Below are positions 1 through 28,575 of a stretch of DNA of 30,373 bases, piece by piece. The notes below the pieces were generated by a model, which saw nothing but the letters and a program-made list of their open reading frames with translations, had not been told where the DNA came from and ran no database searches. Where the stretch lies: positions 1 through 30,373 of the IMG/VR virus record IMGVR_UViG_3300005859_000005, one strand, 5' to 3'. Both the position numbers and the translations under genes were made by a program. Every line of letters starts with the position of its first letter. Positions within the stretch are counted from its first letter, which is position 1.

Positions 1-11
1 ATTGTAAATAC

Positions 12-38
12 AAAGATAAAGATGTCTTTAAATTTGTC
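12..38 (+). promoter_or_regulatory. Rudiviral promoter (purine-rich BRE, TTTAAA TATA box, GTC)
   Basis: AAAGATAAAGATGTCTTTAAATTTGTC, 32 nt before ATG 70; near-identical TATA+GTC copies at 1563-1574, 2103-2114, 2583-2594, 3711-3722. Confidence 0.75.
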
Positions 39-69
39 ATAAGATATATTAAATTTTAAGTGTTTAAAG

Positions 70-327
70 ATGGTCTTAACTAAAAAGATAGAAAAAGTTG
101 AGACATATTTTTGTGAAAAATGTGGTAAAAAATTGCTAGAAAAATTGTCAAACAAAAATAATATAATTTATGATGGATGTGACCATTACATTTGGTATAT
201 TCTTCCATATGATTATTACGAAAAACAACCGACTGTGGAAGGTAAAAAATATGTAGAATGGTTAAAGAAAAATAAAGAAGTCATGGTATATGCTGGAAAA
301 GAGATATATTTTCTAATGAAAAAGTAA
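70..327 (+). CDS. Small putative Zn-binding protein (CxxC...CDHYxW), rudiviral terminal-region family; candidate anti-defence protein
   Basis: CEKC and CDHYIW motifs shared with 1094..1435; own promoter; T-tract after stop. Confidence 0.75.
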   Translation: MVLTKKIEKVETYFCEKCGKKLLEKLSNKNNIIYDGCDHYIWYILPYDYYEKQPTVEGKKYVEWLKKNKEVMVYAGKEIYFLMKK

Positions 328-480
328 TTATAGTTTTTTTGTTTCTAATTTTCAAATTCAGAATTCACATATTTACAGTTTCCAATTTCCTAATTTTGGA
401 AAAATTGAAAGTAGTTTTTCTCAGTTTACAATTCAAAATACTAAGCAGGTCAAAAATATAAGATAACGTTAATGACGTTA

Positions 481-563
481 AAAATAACGAAAAATGCAAA
501 CGTAAAAAAATAGAGATAAATTTATAAAGGGAGAATTACATATGTTATATTGGGGATAAAAAG
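481..563 (+). promoter_or_regulatory. Strong early-type promoter and SD
   Basis: AAAATAACGA...AGAGATAAATTTATAAAGGGAG...TGGGGATAAAAAG-ATG; same layout at 1011-1093. Confidence 0.7.
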
Positions 564-731
564 ATGAAAGTTGTACAAGTCGGACAAACAAAATATTACA
601 TACAAACAAAAGATGATTTAATAAACTTAGCTCAACAGCTTACAAGACAAGGCTACAATATTTCACAGATAGCAGATTTATTAGGCGTGACAGAAAGAAC
701 TGTTAAAAGATATTTGTCCGATTGTTGGTAA
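564..731 (+). CDS. 55-aa HTH DNA-binding protein, SIRV1 ORF56a/SIRV2 gp1-like (absent from ORF track)
   Basis: Hand translation MKVVQVGQTKYYIQTKDDLINLAQQLTRQGYNISQIADLLGVTERTVKRYLSDCW; HTH pattern QIADLLGVTERTVKRYL; GGGGA SD. Confidence 0.9.
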   Translation: MKVVQVGQTKYYIQTKDDLINLAQQLTRQGYNISQIADLLGVTERTVKRYLSDCW

Positions 732-900
732 GTTAGTAAGTTTTTTATTTTCCAAATTTCAAGTTACCAATTTTTTATTTTCTCATTCTACTTTTTCTTT
801 GTTTTTAATTTACAATATAGCCCAGATTATGGTCAATTTTTCTCCTTTTTGGAATAGGAATACAGTAAAGTCAGAAATTCAAATGTTGCATGCAGATGTG

Positions 901-1050
901 GGTTGCAAGGTTGCGAAAAGTTCGCAAATTGTGAGAGAAATGAAAAATGCTAATTAGCAATATGAGCAATATGAGCAATGAGAAAATCAAAGTTGAAAAG
1001 TTGAAAGATGAAAATAACGAGAGATAGAAAGATAAAAAGATAAAGATAAA
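901..1050. repeat. Cluster of short tandem and inverted repeats
   Basis: GGTTGC x2; TTGCGAA-aag-TTCGCAA hairpin 911-927; GCAATATGA x~2.5; AAGTTGAA x2; several AGATA(A/G)A units. Confidence 0.55.
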
Positions 1051-1093
1051 TTTAAATAGGAGAAGAGGGATAAATAATAATGGGGATGGGAAA
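1011..1093 (+). promoter_or_regulatory. Strong early-type promoter and SD
   Basis: AAAATAACGAGAGATA...AAAGATAAATTTAAATAGGAG...TGGGGATGGGAAA-ATG. Confidence 0.7.
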
Positions 1094-1435
1094 ATGAGTA
1101 AAGGAGAAAATGACGAAATAATAATAAAGGAAAAAAGTATTGATAATTCTAGTTATAGATTCAGAAGAGAAATTTACTGTCCAAAATGCCATTGGAGGCT
1201 AATGTCGGCACGTGTTTATATTGATTTAGGAACGCTTGTGATTGATGAAAAATGGGATTGCGATCATTATTATTGGGATATATCGTGGTGTGACCCTAAT
1301 AATTTTGACCCTGATTATTGGAAGTGTAAGCTAATGAAACCGTTATTCGACGAATTAGGGGATAGGATTGTCCTTGTTGTTAGTGCATCAGACGGTTATT
1401 ATTTACTTGTTAAACAGAAGACAAAAAGGAAATAA
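1094..1435 (+). CDS. Cys/Trp-rich putative Zn-binding protein (CPKC...CDHYYW), paralog of 70..327; candidate anti-defence protein
   Basis: Shared motif pattern, C-terminal YYLLVK strand, own promoter and SD. Confidence 0.75.
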   Translation: MSKGENDEIIIKEKSIDNSSYRFRREIYCPKCHWRLMSARVYIDLGTLVIDEKWDCDHYYWDISWCDPNNFDPDYWKCKLMKPLFDELGDRIVLVVSASDGYYLLVKQKTKRK

Positions 1436-1607
1436 TATAGTTATAAGAAATAATATTTTTTATTTTCTTAATTTTTAGTTCTAATTCTATCAATAATTTT
1501 TCTCAATTTACAAATATTAATAAAAAGTTAAAGAAAATTGTAAATGTAAAGGTAAAGAAGGTTTTAAATTTGTCATAATTTCTATATTCTTTTAGGAGGA
1601 AAAGAAA

Positions 1608-2060
1608 ATGTTGGATTTATCAAAAATAAATGAAATAATTAATCAATTAGAAATACTAAAATGTGAAATTATGGAATTACAAGAACAGATAGAAAATCCA
1701 GAATATATAAAACTTAAACAATATTTATTCGAAAATTTGGCTCAAGTTACGAATGACAAGTATATTGGTTCTGTGATTTTTATCGATAATAATAATGTTA
1801 AATATATAACTTTAAATGACTTAGATTCAGGTGATTTTAATTACATTATCTATAATAATAAGGCATATGATTGGTATAAACGTGAATTTTATGATGGTAA
1901 ACTTGTTATATATTATACCGAAGAATATAACATTCCAGAGAATATTATCATGATACTAAAAACAATTCCAGAATCTATTATCAGTAATGCAAAATATTCA
2001 CATTTTAAATTATATTGCCTTTTGAAAAAAAATTATAAATTTGAATTTGTTAAGGTATAA
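1608..2060 (+). CDS. Hypothetical protein with N-terminal coiled coil
   Basis: 150-aa ORF, TATA+GTC promoter, AGGAGG SD. Confidence 0.75.
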   Translation: MLDLSKINEIINQLEILKCEIMELQEQIENPEYIKLKQYLFENLAQVTNDKYIGSVIFIDNNNVKYITLNDLDSGDFNYIIYNNKAYDWYKREFYDGKLVIYYTEEYNIPENIIMILKTIPESIISNAKYSHFKLYCLLKKNYKFEFVKV

Positions 2061-2154
2061 TGTCATTTTTTTGTAATTTTGAAATTTAATGTTAAAAATG
2101 TTTTTAAATTTGTCCTAAGGGATAAAAGGGTTTAAGAGGGGATTAGAGATAATT

Positions 2155-2550
2155 ATGGATGAAAAGTTTATAACATCATTAAAATTAAAACGGAAAACAT
2201 TAATACCAGATTCTGTTTATTCACAACAATTTATATCATCTTTCTTTTTCAATTTTATCGATAATGAGGATAATTATATTGTTCTAACATTTTTTATGAA
2301 AAATGTATTTAGAATATACTTAGATGTCTGGAGAAAACGGGATGAATTTATCGAATATCTGAGAAAGTTTAAGAATGAATTTGAGGATACATATAACTAT
2401 TATCAAAAGCTTCTATTTACTACAAAACAAAATATATTCGAGAAAACTGGAGCCATAGCATGTTTTTTTACTTTTGATGATGATTTAAGAGAAATTTTAA
2501 CAGTATATGTTAATGAATTATTTTGTAATTTTATTGAAAAGCTAAAATAA
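2155..2550 (+). CDS. Hypothetical helical protein
   Basis: 131-aa ORF, TATA+GTC promoter 2103-2114, GAGGGG upstream. Confidence 0.7.
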   Translation: MDEKFITSLKLKRKTLIPDSVYSQQFISSFFFNFIDNEDNYIVLTFFMKNVFRIYLDVWRKRDEFIEYLRKFKNEFEDTYNYYQKLLFTTKQNIFEKTGAIACFFTFDDDLREILTVYVNELFCNFIEKLK

Positions 2551-2627
2551 AGAAAAAATTATGGCAAAAAGATAAAGATGTTTTTAAATTTGTCCTAAAG
2601 AATATACATTTTTAGGTTGATAAAAAG

Positions 2628-3191
2628 ATGGGAAATTTAAGAGTTCAAGTTCAATATAAAGATGGGAAATACCCTTACTTTTTCGATAAGGAGTTAAATA
2701 TAACTGGAATAGGTTCTAGAAATAAAGGTAGAGTTATTTATACGAGCGGGAAATTGGTTAAAGAAGAAAATGGGAAAAGTTATATTGATTTTGAACAGAT
2801 TAGTCCAATAGTTGTTAAACTACAAAATGCTAAAATAACGGTTACACAGTTAGGAACTTTAGTAATAAAACCAGAAGAAGGTTCAACACTTTATGTTGTA
2901 GAAATTCCAGGCGGATATAGGGGAAGTCCTACTACTGAAATTTTATATGGAGATTGCCAGAAGACTAGTATATTAATGTCTCCTGCTGGAAGTTTAGGCG
3001 TTATAGAACATCTTTGGTGTAATGGGAATAGTGAATTTTTGTACAGTATTTCTGGTAGAACTAGGACTGCTGGATTTGGAAGTCTTGTCGATTTATTTGG
3101 AGAAAATTTGAATGGGCGGATAGTAATAAGAGATGGAAATGTTAAGATAACTTATGATAAGGAATTAGATAAATTGTTAGATGATTCTTAA
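2628..3191 (+). CDS. Beta-rich hypothetical protein (GGYRG and SPAGSLG motifs); candidate anti-defence protein
   Basis: 187-aa Gly-rich ORF with own promoter. Confidence 0.75.
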   Translation: MGNLRVQVQYKDGKYPYFFDKELNITGIGSRNKGRVIYTSGKLVKEENGKSYIDFEQISPIVVKLQNAKITVTQLGTLVIKPEEGSTLYVVEIPGGYRGSPTTEILYGDCQKTSILMSPAGSLGVIEHLWCNGNSEFLYSISGRTRTAGFGSLVDLFGENLNGRIVIRDGNVKITYDKELDKLLDDS

Positions 3192-3203
3192 AGAGGGATA
3201 AAA

Positions 3204-3338
3204 ATGGAAATAAAGATAATTTGTTGGGGAAAAGGTGGAGGATTAGTTTATTGGGCAGAAAATTACGAAGAAGAAAGAAAAATTACGGAATATTGTAAAA
3301 AGGAAGGTTTCGAAATTGAATACGAAATAAAACCGTAA
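3204..3338 (+). CDS. 44-aa small protein (absent from ORF track)
   Basis: MEIKIICWGKGGGLVYWAENYEEERKITEYCKKEGFEIEYEIKP; GAGGGA SD; T-tract follows. Confidence 0.65.
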   Translation: MEIKIICWGKGGGLVYWAENYEEERKITEYCKKEGFEIEYEIKP

Positions 3339-3431
3339 GTTAAATGTTCTTTTTTTCTATACCTATTTTTTATCTTCCTGAAAAGATATATATTTGTCAT
3401 AATTTTTCAATTAATTTGGGATGATGAGAAA

Positions 3432-3617
3432 ATGGTTCTGACCGAGGAACAAAAAGAAATTTTAGAAAGAATGTATAATAGAACAGATTACATTATCCGA
3501 AAATATAAAGAATATTTAGATGCATTATCTGAATTTGATAAAACTGGTATATTGAAAATTCATGGGAAAGTTCTTTATGTAAGAAAATACAATAATCAAG
3601 AAAATGAAAATATGTAA
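3432..3617 (+). CDS. 61-aa protein; possible antitoxin mimic (Phd/Doc-type neutralising helix)
   Basis: IIRKYKEYLDALSEFDKTG amphipathic helix; promoter 3387-3398 and GGGATGA SD; function inferred. Confidence 0.55.
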   Translation: MVLTEEQKEILERMYNRTDYIIRKYKEYLDALSEFDKTGILKIHGKVLYVRKYNNQENENM

Positions 3618-3757
3618 TTTTGTTTTCTTTTTTTATGTCAAATTTTTCTCTTGTTTGTTATAATATTACAAATGCTTAAAAAAATTTTGAATTCGAAAGA
3701 TAAAGAGGGTTTTATATTTGTCCTAAAAAATATGTAATTTTAGGGGCGAAAAAGCCC

Positions 3758-4486
3758 ATGACACAAGAAACCCAAGATAGGAAGTTTGAGATAAAGACAA
3801 TAAAAGAAGTAAAATATCTTCCTAATGTTTTCCAACTAAGACATCAAAATGGACAAATATCTACAATAACTACAAGTTATGGAGATTTTATAGATTGTAG
3901 ACCGAAAGAAGACAAGTTTTTTGGATGTCTTGAACTAAGAGATTATGAACTTAAGAGAACAAAAAATGTATATTATGTTCCTGGGATTCCGATATTCTAT
4001 ATAACATTTGAGAAAAGTTTATTCCAAAGTAAAAAACATGTAGAACCTATTGTTACAACAATTTTAACAAATTTTGGACTAATTGATAGAAATTTATTAA
4101 TTACATATACTGGACATGAAATACAAATGTATTCAAGATTCCATAAAGCACAATTACATGAATTTCCATTAATTCATGTCCATAAAAATTTAGAATTTTA
4201 CGAAGTTCCAAAAGCAGACCCTAAAGTTGAATATGACTTTGAGGACACAGACACAATAACAATCTATGATTATGAAATTAAATTTCCAGACATAGTTATG
4301 GTCTCGGAATTATATTCGGAGCCAGGGAAAGCATATCTAGTGTATCCAGAGAATAATATGGAAATAATTGTAACATCTTCCAAAAATGAAGGATTTACAA
4401 TTATGTTACATAAAGATAAATATTATCTTATAACTCATCCAGAAATAGAAGAAGAAAATGAAGGTGAAATGAATGGGAATTCTTGA
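3758..4486 (+). CDS. acrIIIB1: AcrIIIB1-like anti-CRISPR protein (SIRV2 gp48/ORF249 family)
   Basis: C-terminal YEVPKADPK...TITIYDYEIKFP...GKAYLVYPE...KDKYYLITHP matches my recollection of AcrIIIB1; size (242 aa) and position fit. Confidence 0.7.
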   Translation: MTQETQDRKFEIKTIKEVKYLPNVFQLRHQNGQISTITTSYGDFIDCRPKEDKFFGCLELRDYELKRTKNVYYVPGIPIFYITFEKSLFQSKKHVEPIVTTILTNFGLIDRNLLITYTGHEIQMYSRFHKAQLHEFPLIHVHKNLEFYEVPKADPKVEYDFEDTDTITIYDYEIKFPDIVMVSELYSEPGKAYLVYPENNMEIIVTSSKNEGFTIMLHKDKYYLITHPEIEEENEGEMNGNS

Positions 4487-5037: not shown

Positions 5038-5116
5038 ATCTAATTTTCTTTTTTTCTGAAATTTGGAAATTATATTATTAAGCAATTTTTTAATTGTCAT
5101 TTCCTAACTTTAGTTC

Positions 5117-5333: not shown

Positions 5334-6044
5334 TTAAAATATCTTTTTTAATCTATCTACAATTTTTTCTATATCTTTTACGAACGATTTTACAGTACTT
5401 ACATCACTTTCTGGAAGTTCTAATATTAGTCTTTGCGTAACAATTTGTTCTAGATTATCAACTAAAAATTGATAGCTTTGGATAATGTAAGGGTCTGGAG
5501 GATAATTTACATAAATTCCAGTCTGATATTCATATTCAATAATTTCTGTAAAGTCATAAACTACAGTAAATAGATTCTGATTTAATGGAGTTACTTCCAA
5601 TAATTGTCCAGACAAACTTTGTAGACCAATAAAACCATATTCTGGAGCTATAATTACAGAGTTTGGCGGAATTTGAAAAACAAAAGCTATAGTTCTATTG
5701 TCCAATTTATTCCTTACAATTGCTAAAGAATAAAGTGGAATATTTTGCAAATTAGTTATAAAGTTTGACAAGTCATTGGCAAAATAAACTTCTGCAAAAG
5801 CATTTCCGAATAAATAGTTTGGAATTGTATAAGTCTGACCATTTAACGTTATTTCTGCCCCTCTGAGAAGTGATACAAGTATTGGGGAATTTGTTTTGTT
5901 TTGCATTATCCAATCTACTCTTCCTTGTGATTGATTGTATGTATAATATAGAGCCAATTTTTCATTTTGCCATAATAAGTTTGCATTTTGTGGTATAGAT
6001 GTATTTACTTTAATTTGTTTTATATCTGTATATGTCTTTCTCAT
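5334..6044 (-). CDS. Hypothetical beta-rich protein (possibly SIRV1 ORF241-like)
   Basis: 236-aa ORF; minus-strand TATA+GTC at 6071-6083. Confidence 0.7.
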   Translation of the reverse strand: MRKTYTDIKQIKVNTSIPQNANLLWQNEKLALYYTYNQSQGRVDWIMQNKTNSPILVSLLRGAEITLNGQTYTIPNYLFGNAFAEVYFANDLSNFITNLQNIPLYSLAIVRNKLDNRTIAFVFQIPPNSVIIAPEYGFIGLQSLSGQLLEVTPLNQNLFTVVYDFTEIIEYEYQTGIYVNYPPDPYIIQSYQFLVDNLEQIVTQRLILELPESDVSTVKSFVKDIEKIVDRLKKIF

Positions 6045-6755: not shown

Positions 6756-7304
6756 ATGATAAATCAAATCGAAAATATAGTTTTAAAAGAATTAGATAAA
6801 TATAAATTTAATGAGAATATAGAATCAGGATTAAAATGGGATAATATTAGTGAAAGTTGTTATACAAATTTCAAAGATATTATAGTCAAAACAATAATCC
6901 AAATGGTTCATGAAATTTTAGATGGAAATGATTGGAAAATTAAAGCTTTTGAAAAGAATAAGAAAGAAAAAATATTTAATGCATTTATGGAAAATTCTAG
7001 TTTTGAAGTTTTATTAAGTAAATCAGATAACACATTAAAAAAAGTTATTGTAGAACTTAATTTCACAGAAGACGAGAAAAAGAAAATAGCAAAAACATAC
7101 ATAGACTCATTGTTAGAAGGTTACTATTATTTAGATATATGTATTTTTATTGATTTAGACGAAATAAATGTAAATACAATTTCGAAAGTTTTAAGTGACG
7201 AAGTTTATAGATTGTTAAGTCCAGAAGAAATAATAGAGAAATTTAAAGATAAAATAGAAGAGGCTATTAATGTAATAGAAGGTTATAACGAAGATTTTGA
7301 ATAA
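6756..7304 (+). CDS. Acidic helical hypothetical protein, tandem paralog 2 (start moved to ATG 6756)
   Basis: GAGAGGA SD before ATG 6756; promoter 6711-6722; paralog of 6147..6668. Confidence 0.8.
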   Translation: MINQIENIVLKELDKYKFNENIESGLKWDNISESCYTNFKDIIVKTIIQMVHEILDGNDWKIKAFEKNKKEKIFNAFMENSSFEVLLSKSDNTLKKVIVELNFTEDEKKKIAKTYIDSLLEGYYYLDICIFIDLDEINVNTISKVLSDEVYRLLSPEEIIEKFKDKIEEAINVIEGYNEDFE

Positions 7305-22124: not shown

Positions 22125-22403
22125 TTAAGGCTTTTTTTTGTTATTATATAATTCTTTTAATATTTTTACGAAATCCTCTAGAAGACCGTCATTATCAATT
22201 ACGGCACTTAGTAAATAAGCCATATAAATAAGGAATGGAAACATTTCTATTTTTCCATCTGGATAACTTTTTAACATTTCCCGTATTTTATCATCTAAAT
22301 AATTTACTTGGCTTTCTATTTCTTTCATTCTTTTATTGTTAATGTTATATTTTAATTTTATTAAATTTAGATATGCCTTCAGACCTTCTTTAAATTTACC
22401 CAT
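22125..22403 (-). CDS. Helical hypothetical protein, paralog of 22994..23275
   Basis: EIxxQVNYLD...Y..G......IY..Y.L....D pattern shared. Confidence 0.75.
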   Translation of the reverse strand: MGKFKEGLKAYLNLIKLKYNINNKRMKEIESQVNYLDDKIREMLKSYPDGKIEMFPFLIYMAYLLSAVIDNDGLLEDFVKILKELYNNKKKP

Positions 22404-22938: not shown

Positions 22939-22970
22939 TTATGACATATTTATGTTTAAATATGTCATAA
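22939..22970. promoter_or_regulatory. Perfect 14-bp inverted repeat forming back-to-back TATA+GTC promoters
   Basis: TTATGACATATTTA-tgtt-TAAATATGTCATAA between the divergent hjc and 22994 genes. Confidence 0.8.
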
Positions 22971-22993: not shown

Positions 22994-23275
22994 ATGAATA
23001 AGGATTTGGAAAAAATAATAGAAACTTTTAAAGAAACGTTTGGTTTTAATGAAAAAGATTTAGAAGAAATAAGGAAACAAGTTAATTATTTAGATTATTC
23101 ATTTTTTGATATATTGTCAAATTATAAAGAAGGACAAATGCGGTTATCTTCTATAATTATTTATTTTGGATATATTTTAGGTTCAATCTTAGATGACAAG
23201 AATTCACTTGAAATATTTCTATCAGTACTTGAGGCTGTATATATGGTTAAAAAATTTAGAGAAAAAATGAAATAA
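22994..23275 (+). CDS. Helical hypothetical protein, paralog of 22125..22403
   Basis: QVNYLD motif; own promoter. Confidence 0.75.
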   Translation: MNKDLEKIIETFKETFGFNEKDLEEIRKQVNYLDYSFFDILSNYKEGQMRLSSIIIYFGYILGSILDDKNSLEIFLSVLEAVYMVKKFREKMK

Positions 23276-26597: not shown

Positions 26598-26811
26598 GAT
26601 AACTCTTATTCTCACAATAATTTCTACATTTGTAACTACATTATTCGCAATTGTACAACTTTATATAAAAATAAAACAAGCTCTAAAAGATGCTGTAAAA
26701 GAAATAGTAAATTCTGAACTACAAAATCTAAAATCGGAAATTGAAGAATTAAAGATAAATCAAAATGAACTTAAACAACAAATTGAGGAATTAAAAAAGA
26801 AATTGGACTAA
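26590..26811 (+). CDS. N-terminal TM plus coiled-coil protein (SIRV ORF84/74-like)
   Basis: Hydrophobic residues ~4-25 followed by heptads LKSEIEELK...LKQQIEELKK. Confidence 0.8.
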   Translation: MNEITLILTIISTFVTTLFAIVQLYIKIKQALKDAVKEIVNSELQNLKSEIEELKINQNELKQQIEELKKKLD

Positions 26812-26866
26812 GATTTTATAATATTTTATATTTGTCCTATTTTATCCTTTTACATGGTTAAAAAAA

Positions 26867-27292
26867 ATGGAAGAAAAATGTCTTGTAGTTACAAGACATG
26901 AATTAATATCCAAACAAATTGAAGATATTAAGAAAGTTTGTAAATCCATAGATATAATACCAGCTCTTCCAACAGAATTTGAGAAATTAAAAGAACAATT
27001 AAAAGAATATAATACTGTAATTGCAAATTTGCCAATTCCAATAATTTTAACAATTCTACAATTAAAGAAAAATGTCTATACATTTAAAATTGAAAATCTC
27101 GAAACTGTAAAATATGAATCTGATTACGAACTTGAAAAACAAAAAATTCTCGAAAAATATAAAGATATTAAAGATTTATTAATTATACAAGACCCTGATT
27201 TAAAAACTAAAACATTTAGAATTTCAAAATATACAGGATTACAGAAAATTATTAAGATTGATATAATTACAAATGATATAACGAAATGGTGA
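26867..27292 (+). CDS. Alpha/beta protein with Csx16/Csx20-like motifs; candidate ring nuclease
   Basis: LVVTRH...QIEDIKK...VIANLP...FRISKYTG; function inferred. Confidence 0.5.
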   Translation: MEEKCLVVTRHELISKQIEDIKKVCKSIDIIPALPTEFEKLKEQLKEYNTVIANLPIPIILTILQLKKNVYTFKIENLETVKYESDYELEKQKILEKYKDIKDLLIIQDPDLKTKTFRISKYTGLQKIIKIDIITNDITKW

Positions 27293-27498
27293 AAAAAATG
27301 GTAAGAGAAATAGATTTGATAAAAATCGAAGTTCTTCTACAACTTCAATTAGGATTAATTGAGGAACTTTTTGATAATGAAAATTTTACAGAAGATGATA
27401 AATTAACAGTTCTGGAAATGATTAAAAATTTGTCTGAAGAAATTAGTAAAGATATAGCAGTTATATTAAAACAAAATAAAGAAAATAAACAAACATAA
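27286..27498 (+). CDS. Small helical hypothetical protein
   Basis: 70-aa ORF; start may be ATG 27298 (GGTGA SD). Confidence 0.6.
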   Translation: MVKKMVREIDLIKIEVLLQLQLGLIEELFDNENFTEDDKLTVLEMIKNLSEEISKDIAVILKQNKENKQT

Positions 27499-27514: not shown

Positions 27515-27850
27515 ATGGAAATTATAAAAGATTATACTTTAGATGATTTAGATATGTTAATAATTTTAGCAATTGATAAAAAAGAAAATTCTAGTAAAAA
27601 AATTCATGAAACAGTTATAAAACTTTCAAAATTATTGAATATTAAACTTGATTGTATTGATAGTTATTGTGAAGATATTATTGAAAGATTAAATTCAAGG
27701 TCTAGAATACCATTTTGGATTAAGAGAAATTATAAATATAAATTAACAGAATTAGGAAGGAAAACGTATACCGAATTGATAGAAATATTAAAGAAAAAAG
27801 AAAGATGGGATATATTGAAAATATTAAATGGAAATAAAAATAAAAAATAA
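27515..27850 (+). CDS. Winged-helix DNA-binding protein
   Basis: YKLTELGRK wing signature (MarR/PadR-like); GGTGA SD. Confidence 0.7.
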   Translation: MEIIKDYTLDDLDMLIILAIDKKENSSKKIHETVIKLSKLLNIKLDCIDSYCEDIIERLNSRSRIPFWIKRNYKYKLTELGRKTYTELIEILKKKERWDILKILNGNKNKK

Positions 27851-27867: not shown

Positions 27868-28185
27868 TTATAATTTTTTAACCAAATCCCTTATTAAACT
27901 TTTATCTGCAATTGTAAGTTTTAATTCTGGATTGTTAAGGATACTTGTACTTCCTGATTCCTTAACAAGTATAGCTAAATCCCTATGTAATAATCTTGAA
28001 CGATTAGGTCTAATATGATAAAACTCCAGATGAATAGATAGTCTACCAGTTTTCATTCCGCATATTGGACATCTGTAATTGTCAAAGTGTTTTTCCATAT
28101 GTCTCTTAAATTCTGTTTCGTTCTTTAATTCTATCTTACATAAATAACAATAGAATTTTTTCGGAACTCCTTTTATAGCTCCCAT
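27868..28185 (-). CDS. Double C2H2 zinc-finger protein, tandem paralog
   Basis: CYLC-x12-HMEKH and CPIC-x9-HLEFYH; RDLAILVKE tail. Confidence 0.85.
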   Translation of the reverse strand: MGAIKGVPKKFYCYLCKIELKNETEFKRHMEKHFDNYRCPICGMKTGRLSIHLEFYHIRPNRSRLLHRDLAILVKESGSTSILNNPELKLTIADKSLIRDLVKKL

Positions 28186-28203: not shown

Positions 28204-28521
28204 TCATAATTTTTTCGAAAAATACCAAATTCTTTCTTTTTGTGAATGTGTTAATTCTATATTTAATTCCTTTAAGATTTTTGTAGTCCCGGCTTCCTTA
28301 ACAAGTATTGCTAAATCTCTGTATAACAGTCTAGAATGACTAGGTCTAATATGGAAAAGTGTGAGATGTTTCGATAAATCTCCAGTTGGAAATAGGCATA
28401 ATGGACATCTTAAATTGTCGTAATGGTTATATATATGTTTCTTAAATTCTTTTATAGACTTAACTTCTGTCTTACAAATTGGGCAATAATATATTTTTTT
28501 CATTCCCTTACCTATTCCCAT
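28204..28521 (-). CDS. Double C2H2 zinc-finger protein, tandem paralog (start moved to 28521, 105 aa)
   Basis: CPIC..HIYNH and CPLC..HLTLFH; GTC 20 nt before ATG 28521; N-terminus aligns with the paralog. Confidence 0.85.
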   Translation of the reverse strand: MGIGKGMKKIYYCPICKTEVKSIKEFKKHIYNHYDNLRCPLCLFPTGDLSKHLTLFHIRPSHSRLLYRDLAILVKEAGTTKILKELNIELTHSQKERIWYFSKKL

Positions 28522-28575
28522 AAAATATATTATTTTATATGACATTTATAAATGTTTTTTTACTTTTCGATTTTT

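What the first reader, a model, noticed from the sequence alone, without database searches (positions are those of the whole stretch)
26867..27292. Candidate Csx16/Csx20-like viral ring nuclease
Seen: beta1-TRH, QIEDIKK helix, VIANLP and C-terminal FR..Y.G, behind a leadered promoter. Known (recalled): Csx16 begins F(V/I)(S/T)RH with VIGTLP, Csx20 has SH.L...QIEDA, and both have been linked to cyclic oligoadenylate degradation. Inference: a second class of viral anti-type III ring nuclease that may stand in for the missing AcrIII-1. I recall similar uncharacterised ORFs in other crenarchaeal viruses.
Basis: inference. Interest (0 to 1): 0.7.

Follow-up and report, generated by a model that had tools for sequence, protein, structure and literature searches.

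The report
Divergent Csx16-like gene in a rudivirus
A small, well-conserved gene of a Sulfolobus rod-shaped virus is a distant relative of the Csx16/Csx20 enzymes that destroy the cyclic-oligoadenylate alarm signal of type III CRISPR, so it probably helps the virus blunt that defence; no experiment has tested this.

Summary
The ORF at 26867-27292 (+, 141 aa) is real. The query alone matches no annotated family; it matches only PHROG 31280, of unknown function. At family level, Csx16 is the only known family that recurs. Pfam, NCBIfam and three PADLOC Csx16 models are hit below threshold (best E 4.7e-5). The Csx20 model hits the N-terminus of two relatives. Profile-profile comparison with 12-16 bona fide Csx16 proteins gives 89% probability (E 2e-6; reversed control E 0.55), with (S/T)RH and (I/V)(G/A)xLP in register. 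AlphaFold models of both proteins have the same order of strands and helices. Other invariant Csx16 residues (PGA, His31, RGxE) are not conserved, and the C-terminal half is elaborated. It is therefore a new divergent branch, not a Csx16 member by curated thresholds. The SMV3 homologue is already listed as predicted anti-defence gene ADG.68. The window lacks DUF1874/AcrIII-1, as do SMV3 and ATSV, but it carries an AcrIIIB1 homologue. The gene also lacks the upstream element of the terminal putative early genes. Ring-nuclease activity and anti-CRISPR function remain untested inference.

The parts
26825..26840 (+). Own promoter core: TATA-like box followed directly by the rudivirus-specific GTC (TTTTATATTTGTCCTA). 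The GTC lies 33 nt before the ATG, implying a short leader with a weak GGT(T) Shine-Dalgarno-like motif.
   Evidence: PWM core score is 19.1, as for the terminal genes, but the upstream element is absent (-20.5). Homologues L019 and L020 keep TATA+GTC with about 30 nt spacing and GTGA/GGTGA.
26867..27292 (+). 141-aa protein, a divergent Csx16/Csx20-superfamily alpha/beta domain (PHROG 31280). Predicted ring nuclease or cOA-binding protein.
26888..26899 (+). V8-T9-R10-H11 at the end of strand 1. It aligns with the invariant (S/T)RH of Csx16 and is the predicted ligand-binding or catalytic loop.
   Evidence: R10 and H11 are kept in 45/46 family members. The motif aligns to Csx16 fVSRHP with high per-column confidence. 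Csx16 R10 and H11 are invariant.
27017..27034 (+). V51-I-A-N-L-P56 at the strand 3/helix 3 junction. It aligns with Csx16 VIGTLP.
   Evidence: This is the region matched by the Pfam and PADLOC Csx16 models in relatives and the core of the hhalign match. P56 is kept in 45/46.
27215..27238 (+). F117-R118-x3-Y122-x-G124 in the long last strand. R118 and G124 are invariant. This is a family-specific motif with no secure Csx16 counterpart.
   Evidence: MAFFT places the YRGVQY of P0052 here, but hhalign does not confirm it.
27286..27498 (+). 70-aa ORF whose ATG overlaps the stop of the 141-aa gene by 7 nt (ATGGTGA). Probably co-transcribed. Function unknown (phrog_10862).
27515..27850 (+). 111-aa ORF preceded by a GGTGA Shine-Dalgarno motif. 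Probably the third gene of the same transcript. Function unknown (phrog_31811).

Best explanation
The gene encodes a small alpha/beta (Rossmann-like, CARF-related) protein. It belongs to a previously unannotated family of Sulfolobales viruses and plasmids that is a divergent branch of the Csx16/Csx20 ring-nuclease superfamily. By analogy with Csx16 and Csx20, which were shown to cleave cA4, it most likely forms a dimer. That dimer would bind the cyclic tetra-adenylate made by host type III CRISPR complexes in a pocket lined by the strand-1 R10-H11 loop, helix-1 Q17/D20, and R118/Y122. It would cleave the signal into linear products, which lowers activation of Csx1-type effectors. The gene carries its own promoter and moves as a cassette between rudiviruses and bicaudaviruses. 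Shown here: the gene is real and under purifying selection; remote homology to Csx16; matching secondary-structure order; viral-only contexts. Inferred: dimerisation, cA4 binding, cleavage, and benefit to the virus.
For: (1) Csx16 is the only recurrent annotated family. PF09652 hits 3/18 members, best E 3e-4. TIGR02620 hits 2/18. Three PADLOC Csx16 models, a CARF-HEPN-Csx16 fusion model, Csx20 and one hit to a CARF9 model are the only PADLOC hits, best E 4.7e-5.
(2) The family profile searched against 5.8 billion proteins returns only family members and then a PF09652 protein, P0052. hhalign against P0052 gives 95.9%.
(3) hhalign against 12-16 bona fide Csx16 proteins (PF09652, 76-131 bits) gives 89%, E 2.3e-6. 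A reversed control gives E 0.55. The RH and xLP motifs are in register.
(4) A home-built Csx16 HMM scores 18/46 family members above all 9,200 shuffled decoys.
(5) The AF2 models (pLDDT 94 and 96.7) share the element order b1-a1-b2-(a2)-b3-a3-b4-a4-b5.
(6) Csx16 and Csx20 are experimentally confirmed cA4 ring nucleases, and both occur in a few phage genomes (PMC12409355).
(7) The SMV3 homologue YP_009226292 is listed as predicted anti-defence gene ADG.68 (PMC11065993 supplement).
(8) All contexts are viral or plasmid-like.
(9) The carriers (this contig, SMV3, ATSV) lack DUF1874.
Against: The query itself hits no Csx16 or Csx20 model (7.4 bits, within the decoy range). No family member reaches the Pfam cut-off. 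Csx16 invariants P12-G13-A14, H31 and R74-G75-x-E77 have no secure counterparts. Foldseek of the model against PDB gave no hit below E 1e-3 and no CARF or ring nuclease in the top 50. A bona fide Csx16 model, run as a control, did pick up Sis0455 and Sso2081 weakly. The gene lacks the upstream AAAGATAAAGATG element shared by the putative early genes at the left terminus, so early expression is not established. The virus already has an AcrIIIB1 homologue. A native-context study found that AcrIII-1 in SIRV2 does not act as an Acr. No biochemistry has been done.
Confidence: 0.5

Rival explanations
1. It has the same fold and ancestry but does not cleave. The protein would bind cOA or another nucleotide signal as a sponge or sensor, sequestering it.
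For: Several Csx16 invariant polar residues (H31, R74, E77) are not conserved. Csx15, from the same set of predicted ring nucleases, first showed no cleavage and was discussed as a possible sponge.
Against: The R-H pair kept in 45/46 members and the invariant R118 and Q17 are typical of a catalytic or transition-state site rather than binding alone. Csx16 and Csx20 both cleave.
Confidence: 0.15
2. It is a homologue that has been redeployed. The protein would act on a host protein or a viral process, such as replication or transcription control, and any cOA activity would be incidental. This is what was reported for SIRV2 gp37 (DUF1874), which inhibits a host lysine methyltransferase.
For: The native-context study of AcrIII-1. 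The gene lacks the terminal early-gene upstream element. It sits in an internal variable island next to C2H2 zinc-finger genes. In ATSV and its relatives it is the first gene beside stem-loops, near an AAA+ ATPase. The C-terminal half is elaborated with family-specific invariant residues.
Against: The SMV3 copy carries the anti-defence regulatory motif. The residues shared with Csx16 are exactly the conserved motif residues.
Confidence: 0.2
3. It is an unrelated small Rossmann-like protein, and the Csx16 similarity is convergent or a chance match of two short motifs.
For: All HMM hits are below the curated thresholds and mostly cover about 35 residues. Foldseek finds only generic Rossmann hits. 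hhalign probability is 89%, not above 95%.
Against: Five independent Csx16 models, and almost no other family, recur. The reverse search lands on a PF09652 protein. The two motifs occur in the same order and spacing and on the same structural elements. Reversed and shuffled controls are clean.
Confidence: 0.12

Closest known systems
Csx16 (Pfam PF09652 Cas_VVA1548; TIGR02620), a type III CRISPR-associated cA4 ring nuclease
   Same: Strand 1 is followed by (S/T)RH. An (I/V)(G/A)xLP motif sits at the strand 3/helix 3 junction. The core is a five-strand alpha/beta fold with the same element order. It is a small stand-alone protein. hhalign gives 89%.
   Different: It fails the curated thresholds. 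It lacks the PGA after RH, the HLD histidine and the RGxEL motif. It is about 40 residues longer, with long strands 4 and 5 and extra helices. It has its own invariant Q17, D20, E90, R118, Y122 and G124, plus a covarying Cys5/Cys25 pair. It is found only on archaeal virus or plasmid contigs, never beside cas genes.
Csx20, a type III CRISPR-associated cA4 (weakly cA3) ring nuclease related to Csx16
   Same: The N-terminal strand, RH and helix (about 45 residues) of two relatives, SMV3 gp69 and P0045, match the PADLOC Csx20 model at E about 0.01.
   Different: The matches are partial and weak. No Csx20 sequences could be retrieved for a profile-profile test.
AcrIII-1 / Crn2 (DUF1874), the viral cA4 ring nuclease of SIRV1 gp29 type
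   Same: The proposed function and host range (Sulfolobales viruses) are the same. Published work notes partial similarity between Csx16 and DUF1874. The distribution is complementary in the few genomes available: SMV4 has DUF1874, while SMV3 has this family.
   Different: There is no detectable sequence similarity. The genomic slot differs: gp29 sits after Hjc, while this gene sits in the variable island next to the glycosyltransferase.
ADG.68 of Bhoobalan-Chitty et al. 2024 (predicted anti-defence gene family, SMV3 gp69)
   Same: SMV3 gp69 is a homologue, about 32% identical.
   Different: That paper assigns no function. In the present rudivirus the gene lacks the upstream element shared by the terminal genes.

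Membership tests
Csx16 (PF09652 / TIGR02620) | Scores above the curated gathering threshold of the family model | tested here: not met
   The query has no hit. The best family member scores 21.4 bits against a cut-off of 25. Bona fide Csx16 proteins score 76-131 bits.
Csx16 (PF09652 / TIGR02620) | Invariant (S/T)-R-H directly after strand 1 | tested here: met
   T9-R10-H11 is present. R and H are kept in 45/46 family members and align to Csx16 SRH.
Csx16 (PF09652 / TIGR02620) | Invariant P-G-A following RH | tested here: not met
   Csx16 alignment A6 has P12, G13 and A14 invariant. The query has E-L-I, and the family consensus is x-L-L. Note that the Csx16 set was fished with this motif, so its invariance there is by construction.
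Csx16 (PF09652 / TIGR02620) | V-I-G-T-L-P motif at the strand 3/helix 3 junction | tested here: met
   The query has VIANLP. Most relatives have (V/I)IGxLP. P is kept in 45/46. This is the region matched by all the Csx16 models.
Csx16 (PF09652 / TIGR02620) | Invariant His31 (HLD) and R74-G75-x-E77 | tested here: not met
   His31 aligns to L/P of the family's ELP motif. RGxE aligns to a non-conserved stretch. The family's E90 or R118 may be functional substitutes, but this is not shown.
Csx16 (PF09652 / TIGR02620) | Five-stranded alpha/beta core shared with Csx20 | tested here: inconclusive
The order of DSSP elements is the same in the two AF2 models.
Csx16 (PF09652 / TIGR02620) | Encoded in or beside type III CRISPR-cas loci | tested here: not met
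   All 10 or more contexts examined are viral or plasmid-like and contain no cas genes.
Csx16 / Csx20 ring nucleases | Metal-independent cleavage of cA4 | not testable with these tools
   This needs biochemistry. Activity of Csx16 and Csx20 is taken from PMC12409355.
Csx20 | Match to the Csx20 profile | tested here: inconclusive
   PADLOC PDLC01659 gives E 0.008 for SMV3 gp69 (residues 22-63) and 0.014 for P0045 (residues 6-55). The query has no hit.
CARF superfamily (Crn1-type ring nucleases) | Structural match to solved CARF domains | tested here: not met
   Foldseek of the query model against PDB finds no CARF in the top 50 and no E below 1e-3. The Csx16 control model finds Sis0455 (E 0.014) and Sso2081 (E 0.04) only weakly, so the test has low power.
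AcrIII-1 / Crn2 (DUF1874) | Sequence match to DUF1874 | tested here: not met
   There is no Pfam hit. No similarity to SIRV1 gp29 was found by tblastn anywhere in the ORF.
Archaeal-virus anti-defence genes (regulatory-motif definition, PMC11065993) | Preceded by the virus-specific early or anti-defence regulatory sequence | tested here: inconclusive
   The SMV3 homologue is listed as ADG.68. In this window the core promoter and leader spacing resemble those of the terminal genes, but the upstream element is absent (PWM -20.5; total -13.7, against 27 to 49 for five of the six terminal genes).

The most novel reading that the evidence does not exclude
This is a distinct viral family of ring nucleases that has diverged from Csx16/Csx20 and rebuilt its active site: R10-H11 plus Q17/D20 and an invariant R118/Y122 on an extended beta-arm. 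It might have a different substrate range from the cA4-specific cellular enzymes. It would spread as a self-promoted cassette between rudiviruses, bicaudaviruses and plasmids of Sulfolobales, and serve as the cOA-degrading counter-defence in lineages that lack DUF1874.
Probability: 0.3. Interest if true: 0.7.

Novelty: new variant of a known kind. Interest (0 to 1): 0.5.

Why it matters
Type III CRISPR is the main signalling defence of Sulfolobales, and the anti-CRISPR role of the one known viral ring nuclease there, AcrIII-1, has been questioned in native infections. A second, unrelated-looking family with its own promoter, already flagged in SMV3 as a predicted anti-defence gene, would give a concrete candidate to test. 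It would add archaeal-virus members to the Csx16/Csx20 superfamily. Its active-site variation would help define which residues matter for cOA cleavage. The test is simple: purify the protein and incubate it with cA3, cA4 and cA6.

Tried and rejected
- **Direct searches with the query alone.** Pfam gave only a spurious Lit match (E 0.048). NCBIfam and PADLOC gave nothing. PDB by sequence gave only a designed TIM barrel through a low-complexity helix.
- **PDB search with the family profile.** Nothing found.
- **Foldseek of the model against PDB.** Only generic Rossmann-like hits. The BFVD search with this model failed because the job and then the model were lost on the server.
- **Third word-index protein search.** Residues 1-70 of P0052 returned only P0052 itself, because candidates are limited by whole-protein length. 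This search was wasted.
- **tblastn against plasmids.** P0052 and P0020 found nothing. P0052 against phages gave one spurious hit.
- **The search for related loci in genome contigs with a mixed alignment.** No confirmed relative.
- **Sigma-70 promoter and terminator scan.** Not applicable to archaea. The one 'terminator' it reported is a 10+10 bp palindrome inside codons 4-11. It is not conserved in homologues and is no more frequent than chance (3 observed against 1.8 expected), so I rejected it as a feature.
- **Supplement of the ring-nuclease survey.** It lists which phages carry Csx16 or Csx20, but the file is not held. I could not check whether ATSV or SMV3 were already counted there.
- **The 92-aa ORF in the gp29 slot as a DUF1874 remnant.** It shows only 7/20 identities (pairwise BLASTP E 0.001; tblastn against the window E 0.2) and has a different PHROG, so this is not supported.
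- **AcrIIIB2 (SIRV3 gp40).** Excluded as a relative, because the family has no tblastn hit in SIRV3.

Full report
**1. The observation**

The window is the whole IMG/VR contig IMGVR_UViG_3300005859_000005. It is a rudivirus. It encodes the Sulfolobus virus coat protein, Hjc and two GT1 glycosyltransferases. Its core genes are about 78% identical at nucleotide level to the Yellowstone usarudiviruses SIRV4-11.

The ORF at 26867-27292 (+) encodes 141 aa.

The gene is real. Two searches of very large protein sets found about 46 full-length relatives. dN/dS against two rudiviral homologues is 0.13-0.14.

Across the family:
- Q17, R118 and G124 are invariant.
- R10, H11, V8, L13 and P56 are kept in 45/46.
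- C5 and C25 are both present in 40 members and both absent in the other 6. This suggests a disulfide or a paired structural role.

**2. Promoter and gene neighbourhood**

Twenty upstream regions in the window carry a TATA-like box followed at once by GTC; a further such site precedes only a 55-aa ORF. I recall from my own knowledge that this is the signature of rudiviral promoters.

The promoters fall into two classes by the distance from GTC to ATG:
- Most core genes have 21-24 nt (three have 29-30 nt), which is effectively leaderless.
- The six left-terminal genes, one internal gene (ATG at 6756) and this gene have 33-43 nt, with a purine-rich or GGT motif before the ATG.

However, the gene lacks the AAAGATAAAGATG element that precedes the TATA box of most left-terminal genes. 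Its leave-one-out PWM score for the upstream part is -20.5, against +1.7 to +15.5 for five of the six terminal genes; the sixth, at 3396, scores -27.6. Those terminal genes include homologues of AcrIIIB1 (3758-4486) and Aca8 (564-731). Early expression is therefore not established here.

The stop codon overlaps the start of a 70-aa ORF by 7 nt. A 111-aa ORF with a GGTGA Shine-Dalgarno motif follows. Both belong to PHROGs of unknown function.

The gene lies in a variable island between a conserved 73-aa gene (the SIRV7 ORF25 equivalent) and the conserved glycosyltransferase. SIRV7 has other small ORFs there. In two other rudivirus-like IMG/VR contigs (L019 at 77% and L020 at 67% amino-acid identity) the gene sits in the same island but in the opposite orientation. 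It keeps its own TATA+GTC promoter, and in L020 a C2H2 zinc-finger gene follows directly. It behaves as a self-promoted cassette.

**3. Relatives and their contexts**

In annotated phage and archaeal-virus records, the only relatives are hypothetical proteins of the bicaudaviruses ATSV (A144) and SMV3 (gp69), at about 32% identity. All longer metagenomic contigs carrying family members look viral or plasmid-like. They carry ORFans, an AAA+ ATPase, Prim-Pol or ParA, and none carries cas genes.

The SMV3 homologue YP_009226292 is listed as predicted anti-defence gene ADG.68, without a function, in the regulatory-motif study PMC11065993.

**4. Relationship to Csx16/Csx20**

The query alone hits nothing annotated. 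At family level one signal recurs:
- PF09652 (Csx16) is the top recurrent Pfam family: 3/18 members, best E 3e-4 at 21.4 bits, against a cut-off of 25.
- TIGR02620 (Csx16) is hit by 2/18.
- In PADLOC the only families hit are three Csx16 models, a CARF-HEPN-Csx16 fusion model, a CARF9 model and Csx20. The best E is 4.7e-5. The Csx20 hits cover the N-terminal strand-RH-helix of SMV3 gp69 and P0045.
- In the reverse direction, the family profile returned 41 family members from 5.8 billion proteins and then one PF09652 protein, P0052. hhalign of the family against P0052 gives 95.9% over 63 columns that include both motifs.

To obtain bona fide Csx16 proteins I used a degenerate DNA pattern for RHPGA...GTLP. 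This motif was recalled from memory and then validated. It retrieved two Csx16 genes from IMG/VR and about sixteen from bacterial genomes. Ten of ten tested score 76-131 bits on PF09652.

Results with these sequences:
- Profile-profile comparison gives 89% probability, E 2.3e-6. A reversed-sequence control gives E 0.55.
- With a permissive alignment, the family's CLvVsRH aligns to Csx16 fVSRHP and VIGxLP aligns to VIGTLP.
- An HMM built from these Csx16 sequences scores 18 of 46 family members above every one of 9,200 composition-matched shuffles. The query itself scores 7.4 bits, inside the decoy range.

**5. Structure**

The AlphaFold2 model of the query (18-sequence alignment) has pLDDT 94. 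Its elements in order are b1(2-8), a1(15-24), b2(25-31), a2(38-44), b3(50-52), a3(57-65), b4(69-82), a4(87-104), a short strand, and b5(116-128).

A model of a bona fide Csx16 has pLDDT 96.7. Its elements are b1(5-8), a1(14-20), b2(27-29), b3(42-45), a3(49-57), b4(61-66), a4(80-85) and b5(89-93). The order is the same. RH follows b1 and xLP follows b3 in both. The viral protein has an extra helix and much longer b4 and b5.

Foldseek of the query model against PDB found only generic Rossmann-like proteins. As a control, the Csx16 model also found nothing below E 1e-3, but it did list the CARF ring nucleases Sis0455 and Sso2081 weakly. The negative result therefore has low power, though it counts slightly against the claim.

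The Csx16 model searched against BFVD gave, among its top four hits, an unnamed 144-aa viral protein (A0A120L048, probability 0.84). Its length equals that of ATSV A144. I could not verify its identity.

**6. What is not shared with Csx16**

Csx16's PGA, His31 and R74-G75-x-E77 are invariant in my Csx16 set. They have no secure counterparts in the viral family. The viral family has its own invariant Q17, R118 and G124, and near-invariant D20, E90 and Y122.

The protein therefore fails membership by curated thresholds and by several defining residues. The evidence that it is a homologue remains good.

**7. AcrIII-1**

No DUF1874 is detectable in the window. tblastn with SIRV1 gp29 finds DUF1874 in SIRV1, SIRV2 and SIRV3, STIV1 and STIV2, SMV4, some SSVs, AFV1 and the lipothrixviruses. 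It does not find it in SMV3, ATSV or SIRV4-11.

The three genomes that carry the new family thus lack DUF1874, and SMV3 and SMV4 form a complementary pair. However, n is tiny, and SIRV4-11 lack both families. The slot that gp29 occupies in SIRV1 holds an unrelated 92-aa ORF here.

A preprint reports that SIRV2 gp37 (AcrIII-1) is a middle/late gene with no Acr activity in native infection. It instead inhibits a host lysine methyltransferase. This cautions against equating ring-nuclease homology with anti-CRISPR function.

**8. Verdict**

The gene belongs to a previously unannotated family of Sulfolobales mobile elements that is a divergent branch of the Csx16/Csx20 ring-nuclease superfamily. 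Degradation of cA4 to damp type III CRISPR signalling is the most likely function (about 0.5). A non-catalytic binder, a redeployed function, or chance similarity are the alternatives.

I found no paper describing this family as a ring nuclease. A published survey did find Csx16 and Csx20 in a few phage genomes whose identity I could not check.

Noticed in passing
window 3758-4486 (+) and 564-731 (+): A divergent homologue of AcrIIIB1 (SIRV2 gp48; 21% identity, E 5e-12) and an Aca8 homologue (54% identity to SIRV2 gp01). Both lie in the left-terminal gene cluster.
   Followed up: partly
window 1-3760, upstream of the ORFs starting at 70, 1094, 1608, 2155, 2628 and 3758: The left-terminal genes share an extended promoter: AAAGATAAAGATG-like element, then TTTAAATTTGTC(A/C)TAA, then a 34-43 nt leader. 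This is probably the virus-specific early or anti-defence regulatory sequence described for Aca8-encoding rudiviruses.
   Followed up: partly
window-wide, e.g. GTC at 5096, 9484, 11773, 18148, 24039 and 29606: Promoters fall into two spacing classes. GTC-to-ATG is 21-24 nt (three genes at 29-30 nt; leaderless) for most core genes, and 33-43 nt (leadered, with a Shine-Dalgarno-like motif) for the terminal genes, the gene at 6756 and the gene studied here.
   Followed up: partly
window 22125-22403 (-): A 92-aa ORF (phrog_12149) occupies the slot after Hjc and a 69-aa ORF, where SIRV1 and SIRV2 encode DUF1874/AcrIII-1. It shows only a 20-residue weak similarity to the gp29 C-terminus (pairwise BLASTP E 0.001; tblastn against the window E 0.2; PHROG).
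   Followed up: partly
window 27868-28185 (-) and 28204-28545 (-); L020 about 5420-5720 (+): Two tandem paralogous C2H2 zinc-finger genes (phrog_12334) lie next to the operon. In contig L020 a homologous zinc-finger gene directly follows the Csx16-like gene on the same strand. This may be a recurrent linkage and the zinc-finger protein may be a regulator.
   Followed up: no
L019:9991-10423 and L020:4933-5414, compared with window 26809-27292: In two related rudivirus contigs the gene lies in the same variable island but inverted relative to the conserved flanks. It keeps its own promoter and lacks the 70-aa and 111-aa ORFs.
   Followed up: yes
window 26879-26881 and 26939-26941 (codons C5 and C25): The two cysteines covary perfectly across 46 family members: 40 have both and 6 have neither. 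The same 6 also lack D20. This is a possible disulfide in a hyperthermophile viral protein.
   Followed up: partly
window 26878-26899: A perfect 10+10 bp palindrome lies across codons 4-11 (M-S... reading CLVVTRH). It is not conserved in homologues and is no more frequent than in shuffles, so it is probably chance.
   Followed up: yes
window 22942-22967: A palindrome (TGACATATTT...AAATATGTCA) is formed by two back-to-back TATA+GTC promoters that drive Hjc (-) and the 93-aa gene at 22994 (+).
   Followed up: no
L032:2680-3015 (-) and L034:566-865 (-): Canonical Csx16 genes (PF09652, 76-80 bits) sit on two IMG/VR viral contigs of 52 kb and 43 kb. This shows that classical Csx16 also occurs on predicted bacterial viruses or proviruses.
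   Followed up: no
window, one ORF among the 42 scanned (not located): Pfam reports RNA_ligase (E 3e-7) and DNA_ligase_A_M (E 2e-6) for one ORF, AA_permease_2 for another, and a weak NERD hit. I did not work out which ORFs these are.
   Followed up: no
BFVD entry A0A120L048 (144 aa): This is the fourth-best BFVD hit of the bona fide Csx16 model (probability 0.84, TM 0.48). Its length equals that of ATSV A144, but its identity could not be verified with the tables at hand.
   Followed up: partly
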